Notes: generated by a model not told the origin, from the sequence alone. DNA of 64,000 bases from Pocillopora damicornis (GCF_003704095.1 NW_020845073.1:744001-808000); one strand, 5' to 3'; numbered from the stretch's first letter, positions 10,927 through 16,900 are shown. Program-made: numbers and translations.

Positions 10927-13900
10927 ATGGCTTCAAGTCCAAAGGAGGCACAAAATGAGAATGAAACTCAGAATGATGCAGAAAACACGCTTTCCGATAG
11001 ACAGGATGGTACAAACCACAGTCGGTCCAACAGCGCTATTTCTCTACCAGCTTGGCGAGTTGTGTTCTTGAGTTCTAAAGTGCGGCATTCCACCGTTCTT
11101 AACTCGGCTGCTCGATCATCTGTTTTGTTCGTTCCCTACAAATATGACAGTTCAACGCTTGAATCACTTCTAACTCAAGCTCAACATATTTTAGCTGGAC
11201 GAAAAGCTGAAAGCATTGCTTTCATGGCTCACGGACAGGGAAGCAATATGTTCATCTGTGCAAACGACGATCAGGTAACGAGAAATGATACAATTTTCTT
11301 GATTATATTTAAAAATCATGTCAAACACGAGCTGTTTTCAGTCGAAATCTTTATTTTGTATCTTTTGGAATTAAAAAATGTCAATCCCTCTCCAAAAGAG
11401 GATTAAAAAAAATAACTGATACAAAAAGCGAAACGTTATTTTTATTAGTTATGTATTGAGCTCACCGGAAGCGTTATCAAAATGGTAATGAAGTTTGCTG
11501 GGGTTTTGAAGAACTCAGCTAATATTCTAATGACAGCTGAAATTGCTCTCTCAAACTAATGTCTTGCTCGTCTGTTTATCTGTTTTGAGGGTATTGAAAA
11601 AAAAAAAAAACATTTTCAACACGATCTGAAAGACACTCGGTAAGAAGTCGTGATGTTATTTATTTTATTTTGATCAAAGTGTGGGAGTGTATCATGCTAT
11701 TTTTATCCGAAATGGGAATATTCTCAATGAATGTGATATTGAAAATATGTTTTTTTTAAATCTATAAGGAATTTGGAAACTAACATGTGGTGATCATAAC
11801 AACTTCTAATGACTGAAATAGCAGTACTAGTGACCATAGCTTAAATTTTAATTGTATGCTCAGTGGATCTATGATAATTACACAACATAATATTTTTACC
11901 AAGGTTATTTCACTGCATGCTGTCAAAGAACTTAAAGAATTGCAGAATTTCTTCGTGGAAATTGTCAAACTTTGTTTGGATGTTGATTCACCTGGTGCCC
12001 GTCTCGACTTCCTTGCTTGTCCGCTCTCTCACAGCAGTGATGCAAAAGAAATTGTGGAGATGCTGGAAGGCTTAACACAAGTAAGTTAACATCCTTTGCT
12101 ATTTTAGTGCTTGGGATAGGTGTAAAAAGGCTAAATAAAAGTCATAATGGAGCATGATAAGCAGATGTAGTAACCTGTTTATTATTTGGAACTGACTGAC
12201 ATGACTTCCTTTCAAAGACCAAATTTTTTGAGGATTCAAAATGTCTTGCCAGATATGTCAGTTCCTAAATTTAGCTTTTTTTACAAAGGCTATAAAGCCA
12301 CTCTCCCCAACTCACTGTCTGAAAACATCCCTAAAGGTTGCACAAATGGTTACTCTCTGAGGGAATGCGACCTTTTAACAGTACCCAGGTTCCAAACAAG
12401 ATACTTGAAAGACTTATTTAAATATCACGGCGCTGTGTTATGGAACACTATTTGCTCCTATCAACAAGGTGTTGGATTATTGAGTCTCAATAATCTGAAA
12501 AAACATTCACTCAACACAGACTATTGTAAGGAATTAAAATTTGACATACTTTCTTGTATATACTGATATTTTTTTTACTTAGAAGTTATAATATATATAT
12601 CACTTTCAATTTTCAAATTTAAGTTATATTTACATAACACGTAATTTTCCTTTTTTTTCATATGACCCCACAAGGTTGTGGCATAAAATATTATGGTGTT
12701 TAAATAAAGGTCATCATCATCTTTATCCAAAGTATTCTCGAATGTGAAATTTTAAAATAAAAATTTTGAGTACAGTTCTTATCATGGTAGTGTAGAATTT
12801 TGTATTGGATCAACTTATAATCCCCTCACTGAAATTTTCCTTTATCTCCTCACTTGACTGTTTGATATTTTAATGATATTGTAAGGAGAAATTCTGTCTT
12901 GGCTACTAGTGGTAGTTTAAAGGTTAAACTTTACAACTTCCTCAAATGTGATTGGTGCGTTAGCTGCTTTATTTTCACTAATCATTCTGTACAGTTATAA
13001 TCAAACAGTGTAATTGTACAGTTGGCTGTAATTGGACGCCTCTAATGGGACAGTTGAAGCAGCCAATCATACTAAGTCCAACCCACCAAATCCACTATTC
13101 ACATAATTGATCATGATAACCATAATAGCAACAACTACTCATCCTAAAGAAAACAACAGTGGAATTTCCAAAGTGGAGTTTTTTGCTTTAGACATTGTCT
13201 TTACCACAGATATTTGTCCTAAATATACAGCTATTTCAATTTACGTTGTCGGATCAAAGCCTCAAGCCTACAACCCCGAAAGCCTAAAATTAATTATAAT
13301 CTACCCATACCACCTTTCGGTCTTGTCCCGTACCCTTGAAGCTTTGATCCGACAACGTAAATTGAAATAGCTGTATATATTTGTTGTTTTTGGGAATTGT
13401 GACTTTTATGATTAATTGGATTAACAGAAGAGTATTCTCTGATTGTTATCCAGCTCAACCAAGTAGAGAAAAAGAAACTCACAAACCAAGTACAAATATC
13501 CTGCAATATTGAGTAGTTACTAGATAAATGGACAATTGATTATTTTATGTGGGATCCTATGCAAGCATTACTTAATAAGAAGTATCAGAAACCTCTTCAC
13601 TATTTGTTTCACTTTTCCAGCCCTATTTAAATTGTAGATTAAAAAAGCAGTGGGATAATAAATAACTTACGAGATGTTTTGGTGTGTAATATCACTGAGT
13701 ATTTTATCTCGTTTGTATTTTGACTTGCACTGCAGGCTTGTCAAAATACGGCACAACTCATTGAAAATATTCCACAATATTGCACACCAAAACATCTTAT
13801 TAGATGTCTTTACTTTACACTTGTCTCTTATTGTTACATCTGGAATGAAAACCGTGATCAAATGTGGATTACACTGTTGTATATTGTTTTCAGGTTGCAG

Positions 13901-16900
13901 TAGGGATGACTAAGGAGACCATGGGCACAGATTTCAGGATCAAAGGGGATGAGTTAAAGTAAGGAAGCTTTTCTGCCCAGTTTCATTATCACTGATTTAA
14001 CATATTTTAATATGTATCTATCATCTTGGTAGATTAATATTTCACTGGAATACACCATGATGTACCTACTGGCAAATTTAATTTCTGTTTGGTTTGAAAT
14101 CTGTATCTACATGACTTGTACAACTGAAATCATATCTCAGACATTTTGACAAAAAATCCCTGCTATAATTTGTGGCCACCAAATTTTTTTATGCGCACAA
14201 TAAAGAAAACTCAAGTGAAACATTAAATATTTTGAACCATGAGTAAAATTAGCAAATGGTATTAACATTATTATATACTGTCTGTATAAATTTTTACTTT
14301 TGTTGTAATTTTATGCACATATCTAGCACTTAAAAGCCATCTTTGTCTGTTATATAGTAACTTACATCCTGGGGAACTTTACTTCAAACAAGAAAAGATG
14401 CGAGGATGGTCTGGTGTACAGCAGCAAGACATAAGCAACTTTGAAAGGATTAGAACAGTAGGAAAAGGTCAAATCACTTGTTACGATGCAAACTTTTCCT
14501 AAGACAAATGCATGTGAATTTCACATCCACAATACCAAAATTTTGAAGAGTATTCAAGGACTTCAGACAGGTTCCAACAATTTTCAAGCATGTTCATTTT
14601 GCTCCCATTGTTACCTTAGCTTTAATATTTTAGTTTATGTCATTTGTTGAAGAATGTTAAAGAGTGTGTGTTGAACAAGTAGGAGTGATTTTGGCCCCAG
14701 TAGGTAGTGGTGGACATTTTGAGTGCCAGGCTTGTAACACACCTAATGTATTTGAGTTGGAAGGTATAACATATACCTTTGTTTGAAATTTTTAGGAGCA
14801 TATGGTGCAGCTGTACTTTACAGGAAAAAGGATGATGACTCACTTGTCATCCTGAAGGAAATATCTCTGCATGACTTAACAGCAACTGAGAGGCAGATGG
14901 CTATGAATGAGGTTTGTCTCCATCTAGAGCTTTTATGCTTACTACTTTAAGCCCACTTTGCTTGATTAAAATGAACACTTTACTGCTTGAGGTGCTAAGA
15001 TCATTCTTATTATGTTCATTATATTTAGCTTTGTGACACAGAACCATTTCAATCTGGGTGTTAATTTAGCAACAGTGTGCTAGCATCTTTCTGAGAAATT
15101 ATTAAAAAAACAGAGTGACTGCAAAATGTTAAAACTGCTGGTAAATATGTCAAGGGAACAAAATTGGAATTGAGCCATTAAAGCTGCACTTGGTGATCAT
15201 AAACAAGAATCGTACATTCTTACCCTTTATCTCCCAGATTGAATTTGTAATTCTCCTTACTGTCAATCATACAATTTTTGTAGTGTTAGTTCAGAGAATT
15301 TAGTATTGGATCAAGTAATTATTCCCAAATTGATATTTTTCTTTATTCTCATCACTTAGCTGGTTGATATTGTATTGATATTGTAAGAGAAAATTCTGTC
15401 TTGGTCACTCATGGGAGTGAAAGGGTAAAGTTTGCTGGTACAGATATTGAATTATTTTCATTATCATTTCTTACTAGAAATAAAATGCACAGATAAGTTA
15501 AGTGCTTTGAGAAATGTTTCCTTGCTTTTAGCAGATTATTGTCATAATTTCACTAGTTATTACTAAATATTTTTACATTTTCACAGGCCAAAGTGTTGTC
15601 CAAGCTTAGTTTGCATCCTAACATCATCAGCTACTATGACAGTTTTGAAGTGGATGGTACTCTCATGATTGAAATGGAGTATGCTGATGGAGGGTGAGTT
15701 CTGCAGCATCCACACAGTTCTTTATCACATGGCTTTTATTTAATATATTTTGTGCATTTAAGCCGCATACAGCATACAACATACAGCTTTTATTTAATAT
15801 ATTTTGCATACAATTTTAATGCATACCTCCCAAAATCTCCCCTAATGATAAGAGACTTATATGGTTGGTTATAAGTTATTCACCTTTTATAGTAAGAATA
15901 GTAGGACGAGAGTTATTGCTTCTCCTCGTGGATGGATGTCAGTCTATTGCAGGTTGCTTGTAATCTTTCTTCTCTCCCCTCCCCAGTGTCACACTGGAGA
16001 GTGCAGGAGAGCTACTTGGCCCAGGATTGGAAGCTGAACCTTCCTGGCTGCACTTCAGTGCACTGTACATATGACCACCATACCACCCAATCATTATTAT
16101 TAAATGATTTATTGGCAGCTTCTTCTTCTTTGAATTTTCTTCTTATACTCTGGCCTCTGTACTTTTCCTTGTAGGACCCTGGCTCAGTACTTGTCAAGAC
16201 TGGAAAAAGATTTGGAAGAAAGAGAGATCCTATTGATTTTTCAACAGATGCTGTCTGCTTTGAAGTATATTCATGTCAACAACATCCTTCACAGGTACAA
16301 GTCTGATACAATTTTGAATACAAGTATTATTCCTATGCACTTGTTGTATGCCTGTCAGCTTTTTTTTATGAGCATGTAACTAGTGAGGGAGATTATACAT
16401 TATAGATGAAATTTCAAAATTAGTTGTAAAATTAGCACTCTTGTATCAGTAGCAGCTTTTTATTTTAGTAATGTCATCCTTTTAAAGGCCTGTTGGAGGC
16501 CGGAAATTGTTGGGAGGTTTGCAGAATTGTGTTTTTAGATGAAAAAAAAATTGTTGACAGAAACAAGTTTAGGTCTTTCTTGAATCTGGATGATTCCTGA
16601 ATTTGTTTTCCCAAGTCCACTTTTGTAATTAAAAAGCAGGCAAGTTAGTAAAGTTCCAACAAGGATTGTCTCATCATCTGATGGCTGTGTACTTTTGGTC
16701 CTTACATACAGGGATCTAAAGACAGCCAACATATTCCTTACCAAGGAAGGTGTGGTCAAACTGGGTGACTTTGGTATCAGTAAACAACTGGAGGGCTCTA
16801 AGGCAAACACAGTGCTGGGAACACCTTATTATATTTCACCAGAAATGGTATGCTCATCTGATCATGACTGTTTGAATGCTGGAAAGAGCTAGCCTCTCAA

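What the first reader, a model, noticed from the sequence alone, without database searches (positions are those of the whole stretch)
10927..14467. NEK kinase fused to an N-terminal DUF4347-like domain that keeps a His-Gly...Cys (caspase-fold-like) dyad: candidate protease-kinase
Seen: exons 1-4 splice in frame into the kinase and add ~220 aa before the Gly-rich loop. The added sequence includes RVVFLSSKVRHSTVLNSAARSSVLFVPYKYDSSTLESLLTQAQHILAGRKAESIAFMAHGQG...ELQNFFVEIVKLCLDVDSPGARLDFLACPLSHSSDAKEIVEMLEGLTQVAVG. Established (from memory): this pattern matches DUF4347 as in vertebrate ECT2L (LILISSR...TLESLL...ALDGQKAQSIGIF), the NSMF/Jacob C-terminus and bacterial adhesin N-termini (HG...LYGC). 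Vertebrate NEK8/NEK9 have no such domain. Here a hydrophobic strand ends in His102-Gly (11230-11235) and another ends in Ala-Cys155 (12018-12020). That is the layout of clan CD cysteine proteases (caspases, C80 autoprocessing domains), and as I recall ECT2L and NSMF lack the full pair. Inference: a NEK with a possibly active self-cleaving or regulatory protease module, an architecture I do not know to be described.
Basis: partly seen in the sequence, partly recalled or inferred. Interest (0 to 1): 0.9.

Follow-up and report, generated by a model that had tools for sequence, protein, structure and literature searches.

The report
Coral NEK kinase with protease-like domain
This coral gene encodes a NEK kinase that carries a protease-like domain (DUF4347) in front of the kinase. 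The same design occurs in animals from sponges to sharks, but the two supposed catalytic residues are often lost, so the domain probably works as a regulatory or docking module, not as a protease.

Summary
RNA contigs from four independent studies join exons 10927-11274, 11904-12080, 13894-13958 and 14358-14467 to the kinase exons at GT..AG borders. A transcript-derived database protein (P0130, 1524 aa) reproduces exons 1 and 2 exactly.

The added 190 aa are a DUF4347 domain:
- Pfam scores 23.1 bits here (cut-off 24.6), and the Nematostella orthologue passes at 35.9.
- The ECT2L chain in the PDB matches at E 9.6e-5.
- An AlphaFold model (pLDDT 88.5) matches the Pseudomonas effector Tce1, a published putative C80-like cysteine protease, at Z 11.4.

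So a clan-CD-like origin is plausible.

The architecture is not coral-specific. At least 94 orthologues carry it, from sponges, cnidarians, echinoderms, amphioxus, sharks, molluscs and arthropods. None appears to be characterised.

Among 95 sequences His is kept in 64%, Cys in 60% and both in 39%. Their presence is uncorrelated. Whole clades keep the domain with only one of the two residues, while Asp151 and Tyr205 are invariant.

The conserved role is therefore most likely non-catalytic. Protease activity in corals is not excluded, at about 15-20%.

The parts
9103..10926 (+). 5' untranslated region: a short non-coding exon (9103-9143), an intron, then 9732-10926 contiguous with exon 1
   Evidence: cDNA L001 mapped on the window. 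RNA contigs run contiguously over 10400-11274. The X5 contig starts near 10707.
10927..11274 (+). Coding exon 1, aa 1-116: a low-complexity N-terminus (aa 1-42) and the first half of DUF4347 (from Trp43)
   Evidence: Pfam gives DUF4347 at E 0.04 for this exon alone. The phmmer search of 1.8 billion proteins gave 67 hits.
11230..11235 (+). His102-Gly103, just after strand aa 96-100 of the model
   Evidence: The His column is H in 61 of 95 orthologues.
11904..12080 (+). Coding exon 2, aa 117-175: the central helix and the strand RLDFLAC of DUF4347
12006..12008 (+). Asp151, invariant in all 95 NEK orthologues and in the 15-sequence alignment with bacterial DUF4347 proteins
12018..12020 (+). Cys155, three residues after strand aa 149-152, just before a helix
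   Evidence: The column is C in 57 of 95 orthologues.
13894..13958 (+). Coding exon 3, aa 176-197: last strand and loop of the domain
14358..14467 (+). Coding exon 4, aa 197-234: end of DUF4347 (invariant Tyr205 at 14380-14382), a short conserved linker and the start of the kinase Gly loop
14796..34982 (+). Remaining ~31 coding exons: kinase domain (aa 225-474, with GKGAYG, Lys254, HRD347, DFG367), five RCC1 repeats, a long C-terminal region and the end CGVM
   Evidence: Pfam on P0130, exon map, motifs.

Best explanation
The window holds the 5' part of a real, expressed coral gene for a 1524-aa NEK8/9-like kinase. Its kinase domain is preceded by a DUF4347 domain (aa 43 to about 206) and followed by RCC1 repeats and a prenylation box.

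DUF4347 is an alpha/beta domain that descends from C80-like (clan CD) cysteine proteases. It is also found in bacterial giant adhesins, in the Pseudomonas T6SS effector Tce1 and in the ciliary transition-zone protein ECT2L.

The domain-kinase-RCC1 design is an old paralogue. It is present across animals and is missing from the bony vertebrates among the hits seen.

Shown: the splice model, domain identity, fold, distribution and residue census.

Inferred: in this NEK family the domain acts mainly as a non-catalytic module (a pseudoprotease used for docking, targeting or regulating the kinase). The reason is that the His/Cys pair is dispensable in most lineages, while other residues (Arg44, Tyr71, Ala98, Phe132, Asp151, Leu153, Tyr205) are fixed. 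In this coral the pair survives, so latent protease activity remains possible but is unproven.
For: - Splicing: four RNA studies show all four joints. P0130 and its cDNA L001 give the joined form.
- Domain identity: Pfam DUF4347 scores 23.1 bits on P0130 and 35.9 on Nematostella P0141, and 33.9 on P0058. The PDB ECT2L chain matches at E 9.6e-5 with the coral domain and 1.5e-33 with the family profile. ESM Atlas neighbours are DUF4347 clusters.
- Fold: the AF2 model has pLDDT 88.5 and pTM 0.85. Tce1 (9qpe_G) matches at Z 11.4, rmsd 3.8, 154 aligned, and stands alone at the top.
- Literature on Tce1: PA0256/Tce1 has DUF4347 (PMC8262886). It is a putative Cys protease whose His186/Cys240 align with the TcdB dyad, and Tce2 C115S loses toxicity (PMC13323088).
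- Link to C80: Peptidase_C80 gives sub-threshold hits on the DUF4347 stretch of P0015 and P0062, and a hit in one A2 member whose position was not shown.
- Distribution: at least 94 full-length orthologues, from sponges to sharks.
- Residue census: H 61/95, C 57/95, both 37/95, D151 and Y205 95/95. His ranks 40th and Cys 48th of 187 columns. The Fisher odds ratio is 1.08, p = 1.
- Kinase motifs are intact.
Against: - His and Cys are both kept in all scleractinian sequences seen, in all 11 echinoderms, and in amphioxus, most sharks and Limulus. About 70% of complete bacterial domains also keep both. Activity in these lineages cannot be excluded.
- No coordinates were available, so the His-Cys distance in the model was not measured.
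- The coral protein itself falls 1.5 bits short of the Pfam cut-off.
- Matches to solved clan CD proteases other than Tce1 (CHAT Z 6.8-7.0, TcdB CPD Z 5.7, C11 Z 5.7, Raptor Z 5.4-5.8) are tied with unrelated alpha/beta folds.
- No direct evidence shows what the domain binds.
- The two-domain model (pTM 0.65) gives no confident packing on the kinase.
Confidence: 0.62

Rival explanations
1. Bifunctional protease-kinase. Where His102 and Cys155 persist, as in this coral, the DUF4347 domain is an active C80-like cysteine protease. It would autoprocess the NEK or cleave a partner, perhaps switched on by a small molecule, as inositol hexakisphosphate switches on C80 domains.
For: - The dyad is present, each residue just after a strand.
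- The closest solved structure is Tce1, a putative Cys protease (PMC13323088).
- Sub-threshold C80 Pfam hits occur in bacterial DUF4347 proteins.
- The dyad is kept in 37 of 95 orthologues spread over deep branches, and in most bacterial domains.
Against: - Molluscs keep Cys without His (Ser there), and crustaceans and insects keep His without Cys (Ala there), yet the domain stays conserved.
- His and Cys presence is uncorrelated, and the two columns are only mid-ranked for conservation.
- The Gly after His is not conserved (rank 115 of 187).
- Nematostella, a fellow anthozoan, has Asn for His.
- Tce1 itself has no demonstrated activity (PMC13323088).
- The N-terminal 42 aa that an upstream cut would release are not conserved. 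The conserved linker to the kinase is the same in lineages without the dyad.
Confidence: 0.17
2. Gene-model or assembly artefact: exons 1-4 belong to a neighbouring gene or to a chimeric transcript and are not normally part of the NEK protein.
For: RNA contigs of three runs continue upstream of 10400, and the cDNA carries a 1234-nt 5' leader. Contigs alone cannot prove a single transcript.
Against: - The same in-frame junctions appear in four independent studies.
- The same N-terminal domain sits directly before the kinase in at least 94 species, including NCBI gene models.
- The linker between domain and kinase is conserved.
Confidence: 0.02
3. Generic Rossmann- or flavodoxin-like ligand-binding domain unrelated to proteases. 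On this view the His/Cys layout is a coincidence of strand-end positions common to all three-layer alpha/beta folds.
For: Foldseek and VIA lists are full of SGNH hydrolases, CheY receivers and short-chain dehydrogenases at scores similar to clan CD members.
Against: - The one outstanding match is Tce1 (Z 11.4).
- A clan CD CHAT protease is second in both VIA lists.
- Peptidase_C80 is the only recurring second Pfam family on DUF4347 stretches.
- The dyad is kept in most bacterial members.
Confidence: 0.1

Closest known systems
ECT2L (vertebrate DUF4347-DH/PH protein; PDB 11xu chain A1)
   Same: It has a homologous DUF4347 domain (E 9.6e-5 to the coral domain over 170 residues; E 1.5e-33 to the family profile). 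It shares the motifs RV.F.SS, Y.Y, TLESLL, G.KA.SI, DF and YF..KL..WS.
   Different: ECT2L has Ser where the coral has His and a gap where it has Cys. Its domain is internal (aa 276-475) and joined to a RhoGEF, not a kinase. It was reported as a dimeric microtubule-associated protein of the ciliary transition zone (bioRxiv 10.64898/2026.06.11.731632). No such location is known for this NEK.
Tce1 (PA0256) and Tce2 of Pseudomonas aeruginosa, T6SS cargo effectors (PDB 9qpe chain G)
   Same: This is the best structural match (Z 11.4, rmsd 3.8, 154 of 178 residues). PA0256 is annotated with DUF4347 (PMC8262886). The His...Cys spacing is 54 residues against 53 here (PMC13323088).
   Different: These are small secreted bacterial effectors carried inside Hcp rings, with only 10% identity. 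My family profile did not find Tce1 by sequence. Only Tce2 has a Cys-dependent phenotype.
Peptidase C80 autoprocessing domains (TcdA/TcdB, MARTX) and other clan CD enzymes (CHAT, C11, caspases)
   Same: They share the three-layer alpha/beta fold with His and Cys near the ends of neighbouring strands. Weak structural matches (Z 5.7-7.0) and sub-threshold Pfam C80 hits in bacterial DUF4347 proteins support the link.
   Different: The dyad is not conserved in the NEK family. No InsP6 site, no cleavage site and no activity are shown. The scores do not separate clan CD from other alpha/beta folds.
Vertebrate NEK8 and NEK9
   Same: They share a NEK kinase domain followed by RCC1 repeats. NCBI names many orthologues of this gene 'Nek8-like' or 'Nek9-like'.
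   Different: Neither has an N-terminal DUF4347 domain. This protein is about 1500 aa with a long C-terminal region and a CaaX end. Sharks and rays carry it as an extra 'uncharacterized protein', which suggests a separate paralogue. That was not tested with a tree.
Raptor N-terminal caspase-like domain in mTORC1 (from memory: Ginalski et al. 2004)
   Same: It is a clan CD-like domain without known protease activity that serves a kinase complex as a scaffold. It gives weak structural matches here (Z 5.4-5.8).
   Different: It sits in a separate subunit, not fused to the kinase, and no sequence relationship is shown.

Membership tests
DUF4347 (Pfam PF14252) | Score at or above the Pfam gathering cut-off (24.6 bits) | tested here: not met
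   P0130 scores 23.1 bits, E 6.8e-5, aa 45-191 on profile positions 1-134 of 164. Exon 1 alone scores 14.1 bits. Orthologues pass: Nematostella 35.9 and P0058 33.9. Several others have precomputed PF14252 hits.
DUF4347 (Pfam PF14252) | Significant sequence similarity to undisputed members | tested here: met
   phmmer of exon 1 hits bacterial DUF4347 proteins (P0006 4e-11, P0015 4e-6, P0030, P0063 and others). ECT2L matches at E 9.6e-5. The coral domain aligns over its whole length with the family.
DUF4347 (Pfam PF14252) | Same fold as a solved member | tested here: met
   The model (pLDDT 88.5) matches Tce1 9qpe_G at Z 11.4, and the next hit is Z 7.0. That Tce1 carries DUF4347 is taken from PMC8262886, not tested here.
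Clan CD cysteine peptidases (C80-like) | Caspase/C80-type alpha/beta/alpha fold | tested here: inconclusive
   CHAT scores Z 6.8-7.0 (rank 2), TcdB CPD Z 5.7, C11 Z 5.7 and Raptor Z 5.4-5.8. These are tied with CheY, SDR and SGNH folds.
Clan CD cysteine peptidases (C80-like) | His then Cys, each just after a hydrophobic beta-strand | tested here: met
   His102 follows strand aa 96-100 and Cys155 follows strand aa 149-152 in the model. Their distance in space was not measurable because no coordinates were given.
Clan CD cysteine peptidases (C80-like) | Catalytic dyad conserved among orthologues | tested here: not met
   H is in 64%, C in 60% and both in 39% of 95 sequences. The columns rank 40th and 48th of 187, and their presence is uncorrelated.
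Clan CD cysteine peptidases (C80-like) | Proteolytic or autoprocessing activity | not testable with these tools
   This needs recombinant protein.
NEK (NIMA-related) kinases with RCC1 repeats | Protein kinase domain with intact catalytic motifs | tested here: met
   Pkinase scores 212 bits over aa 225-474. GKGAYG232, VILK with Lys254, HRD347, DFG367 and SPE390 are present.
NEK (NIMA-related) kinases with RCC1 repeats | RCC1 repeat domain after the kinase | tested here: met
   RCC1 scores 203 bits in five stretches, and WD40_RLD scores 221 bits.
NEK (NIMA-related) kinases with RCC1 repeats | Orthology to NEK8 or NEK9 specifically | not tested
   No tree with vertebrate NEK8 and NEK9 was built. 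The names come from NCBI annotation only.

The most novel reading that the evidence does not exclude
In lineages that keep both His102 and Cys155 (stony corals, echinoderms, amphioxus, sharks, horseshoe crabs), the N-terminal domain may be a working C80-like cysteine protease fused to a NEK kinase. It would be a protease-kinase that processes itself or a partner, possibly under small-molecule control. Other lineages would have turned it into a pseudoprotease.
Probability: 0.17. Interest if true: 0.85.

Novelty: new variant of a known kind. Interest (0 to 1): 0.55.

Why it matters
- NEK kinases are studied almost only through the eleven human members. This gene represents a further, ancient NEK line that bony vertebrates seem to have lost, so it has gone unstudied although sharks, sea urchins, oysters and corals all have it.
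- Its extra domain ties three things together that have been treated apart: bacterial DUF4347 adhesin and effector domains now suspected to be cysteine proteases, the ciliary transition-zone protein ECT2L, and a kinase family known for ciliary roles.
- It gives a concrete, testable case of a protease fold being reused as a kinase accessory domain.
- It also offers a natural series of variants, with and without the dyad, in tractable animals such as Nematostella and sea urchin.

Tried and rejected
- Searching own genome for PF14252: no match, and none in the control genomes. The exon-split, six-frame search is uninformative.
- Foldseek against the PDB: only weak hits (TM about 0.4) apart from Tce1.
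No verdict.
- Folding aa 38-482 as one chain: both domains are confident (pLDDT 89) but pTM is 0.65. That gives no support for a fixed packing of the domain on the kinase, and it is no evidence against one.
- Family profile A2 against PDB sequences: it did not find Tce1, so residue-level equivalence of His102/Cys155 with Tce1 His186/Cys240 rests on spacing and strand position only.
- Nematostella 'NEK8/9-like ao18', expressed in the ciliated apical organ (PMC4300403): I could not show that it is the orthologue P0141, so I did not use it as evidence.
- The artefact or chimeric-transcript reading was rejected.
- Joined model: I sent no self-joined exon model to any search or fold tool. Searches were done exon by exon by reference or with the natural joined forms the tools returned (P0130, L001). 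In one search a script concatenated the four exon stretches once, only to count mismatches against P0130. Nothing of it was printed or saved. The single V178I difference it counted lies in exon 3. The exon-wise map of cDNA L001 on the window shows mismatches in that exon, and the alignment of the L001 fragment shows Ile where the window encodes Val.
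Full report
**Observation.** The region was read directly.
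- The ATG is at 10927, and an in-frame stop lies upstream at 10840.
- Exon 1 (10927-11274) encodes 116 aa. Exon 2 (11904-12080) encodes 59 aa. Exon 3 (13894-13958) has 65 nt and exon 4 (14358-14467) has 110 nt.
- All borders are GT..AG, and the frame runs into the kinase Gly loop, which spans exons 4 and 5 (exon 5 starts at 14796).
- His102-Gly103 is at 11230-11235 and Ala154-Cys155 at 12015-12020.

**Transcripts.** The stretch is held by many coral and marine RNA runs. Laying four of them, from four studies, on 10400-15400 gave in each a single long contig (1961, 3737, 5033 and 6204 nt). Each contig carries the joints 11274|11904, 12080|13894, 13958|14358 and 14467|14796.

Independently, the protein collection holds P0130 (1524 aa, from a Logan transcript contig, 72 member sequences). 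Its aa 1-116 and 117-175 equal exons 1 and 2 at 100%. Its cDNA L001 (CDS 1235-5809) maps on the window in about 36 exons from 9103 to 35702, with the stop at 34982.

The gene model is therefore confirmed. The only difference from the window over aa 1-233 is V178I.

I sent no self-joined model to any search or fold tool. Exons were searched one by one by reference, and the joined form was used only as P0130 or L001.

**What the domain is.**
- Pfam gives DUF4347 at E 0.04 for exon 1 alone and 23.1 bits (E 6.8e-5, cut-off 24.6) for P0130 aa 45-191. The Nematostella orthologue scores 35.9 bits and P0058 33.9.
- A phmmer search of exon 1 against 1.8 billion representatives gave 67 hits. They include bacterial giant adhesin-like proteins with undisputed DUF4347 domains, and full-length NEKs of shrimp, centipede, snail, oyster and starfish.
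- The coral domain matches the ECT2L chain in the PDB at E 9.6e-5 over 170 residues. A 15-sequence family profile matches it at E 1.5e-33.
- The ESM Atlas places the domain next to DUF4347 clusters and, lower down, NSMF clusters (leads only).

**Fold.** AlphaFold2 on aa 38-224 with 94 orthologues gave pLDDT 88.5 and pTM 0.85. The model is a three-layer alpha/beta domain. His102 comes just after strand aa 96-100. Cys155 comes after strand aa 149-152, just before a helix.
- Foldseek found little.
- VIA-align against 48,161 chains put Tce1 of Pseudomonas aeruginosa (9qpe_G) alone at the top: Z 11.4, rmsd 3.8, 154 aligned.
- A clan CD CHAT protease followed at Z 6.8-7.0. TcdB's cysteine protease domain, a C11 protease and Raptor's caspase-like domain scored Z 5.4-5.8. 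These are tied with CheY, SDR and SGNH folds.

PA0256/Tce1 is annotated with DUF4347 (PMC8262886). In 2026 it was described as a putative cysteine protease whose His186 and Cys240 superpose on the TcdB dyad. The paralogue Tce2 loses yeast toxicity on C115S, but Tce1 showed no activity (PMC13323088).

Peptidase_C80 gives sub-threshold Pfam hits on the DUF4347 stretch of two bacterial members (E 3e-4 and 7e-4), and a hit at E 4e-3 in a third whose position was not shown.

Together these make a C80-like origin of DUF4347 likely.

**Distribution.** A search with the starfish orthologue (aa 55-500) listed 120 proteins, nearly all covering the DUF4347 part. They come from:
- sponges, anthozoans, jellyfish, hydrozoans and an acoel;
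- all echinoderm classes, hemichordates and amphioxus;
- more than a dozen sharks and rays;
- a brachiopod, nemerteans, annelids, many molluscs and a priapulid;
- chelicerates, crustaceans, a termite, a cockroach, flatworms and the nematode Plectus;
- a EukProt entry labelled Opistho-2.

Most are called 'uncharacterized protein' or 'Nek8/Nek9-like'. About a fifth carry a precomputed PF14252 hit. No bony vertebrate and no holometabolous insect is among the 120.

Only five open papers mention DUF4347, and none deals with a kinase. The architecture is thus visible in databases but, as far as I could see, undescribed.

**Is it a protease here?** I made a census on 95 aligned sequences.
- His is present in 61, Cys in 57 and both in 37.
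- Bivalves and most gastropods have Ser for His. Bivalves and some gastropods (e.g. Haliotis) keep Cys, while most gastropods have Trp.
- Crustaceans and insects keep His but have Ala for Cys.
- Spiders, copepods and a centipede have Thr or Ser for Cys.
- Nematostella has Asn for His.
- The His column ranks 40th and the Cys column 48th of 187. The Gly after His ranks 115th.
- Presence of His and Cys is uncorrelated (odds ratio 1.08, p = 1). The test ignores phylogeny, but the clade patterns say the same.
- By contrast Asp151 and Tyr205 are invariant. Arg44, Ala98, Phe132 and Leu153 are kept in over 90%, and Tyr71 in 88%.
- Asp151 is also invariant against bacterial members.
- In bacteria about 70% of complete domains keep both residues.

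The simplest reading is that the ancestor was a cysteine protease and that in the NEK family the domain was kept for something else. Each of the two residues is retained or lost on its own.

In stony corals, echinoderms, amphioxus and most sharks the pair is intact, so activity there is not excluded.

**Mechanism.**
- Shown: an intact kinase (GKGAYG, Lys254, HRD, DFG) is preceded, through a short conserved linker (LYF..K...WS), by a well-folded DUF4347 domain.
- Inferred: the domain is a non-catalytic module that docks a partner, places the kinase, or regulates it.

The only functional hint for a eukaryotic DUF4347 protein is ECT2L. It was modelled as a dimer on the B-tubule of the ciliary transition zone (bioRxiv 10.64898/2026.06.11.731632), and NEKs are classic ciliary kinases. 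This link is analogy only.

A two-domain AlphaFold model gave pTM 0.65, so no fixed packing on the kinase is supported. The complex test could not be run.

**Comparison and novelty.** The protein is a NEK with RCC1 repeats, like NEK8 and NEK9.

It is a member of DUF4347 by homology and fold, although it sits 1.5 bits under the Pfam cut-off. It should not be filed as a clan CD peptidase, because the dyad-conservation test is not met and activity is untested.

I rate it a new variant of a known kind: a described kinase family with an undescribed, protease-derived accessory domain, in an overlooked pan-metazoan paralogue. Interest is moderate (0.55). The protease-kinase reading would be striking, but I give it about 17%.

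Noticed in passing
window 9103-10926: The cDNA carries a 1234-nt 5' leader with its own intron (9144-9731) and several upstream ATGs, for example atgatgtga at 10910-10918. RNA contigs of three runs continue further upstream, and one starts near 10707. The true transcription start and any uORF control are open.
   Followed up: partly
window 12738-12904 and 15243-15400: Two intronic stretches reach RNA word depths of 5,000-75,000 in all four runs. Contigs jump between them (joints 128xx to 153xx). They look like copies of a dispersed, highly transcribed repeat.
   Followed up: no
window 13223-13378: Intron 2 holds an inverted repeat with 49-nt arms, 94% complementary, 58 nt apart. It has RNA depth well above the surrounding intron in three of the four runs. 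It could be a MITE-like element or a hairpin RNA.
   Followed up: partly
window 13900-13902: The window encodes Val178, while the transcript-derived protein P0130 has Ile. This is probably an allelic or strain difference.
   Followed up: yes
window 34971-34982: The protein ends in CGVM, a CaaX-type box, as noted by the earlier finding s1-770028. Most orthologues in the alignment consensus also end with a Cys four residues from the end.
   Followed up: partly
P0060 (Logan protein, 437 aa): This eukaryotic protein carries a DUF4347 domain at aa 254-415, with His kept and Cys absent. Separately, NSMF clusters are Atlas neighbours of the coral domain (a lead only).
   Followed up: no
ESM Atlas neighbours: One DUF4347 cluster of 76 members is labelled mostly Nucleocytoviricota, so giant viruses may also carry the domain.
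   Followed up: no
G000 as a whole: The genome has 234.35 Mb in 4393 contigs. From memory this fits the published Pocillopora damicornis assembly. Exon 1 is only 62% identical to Acropora millepora. The species was not verified.
   Followed up: no
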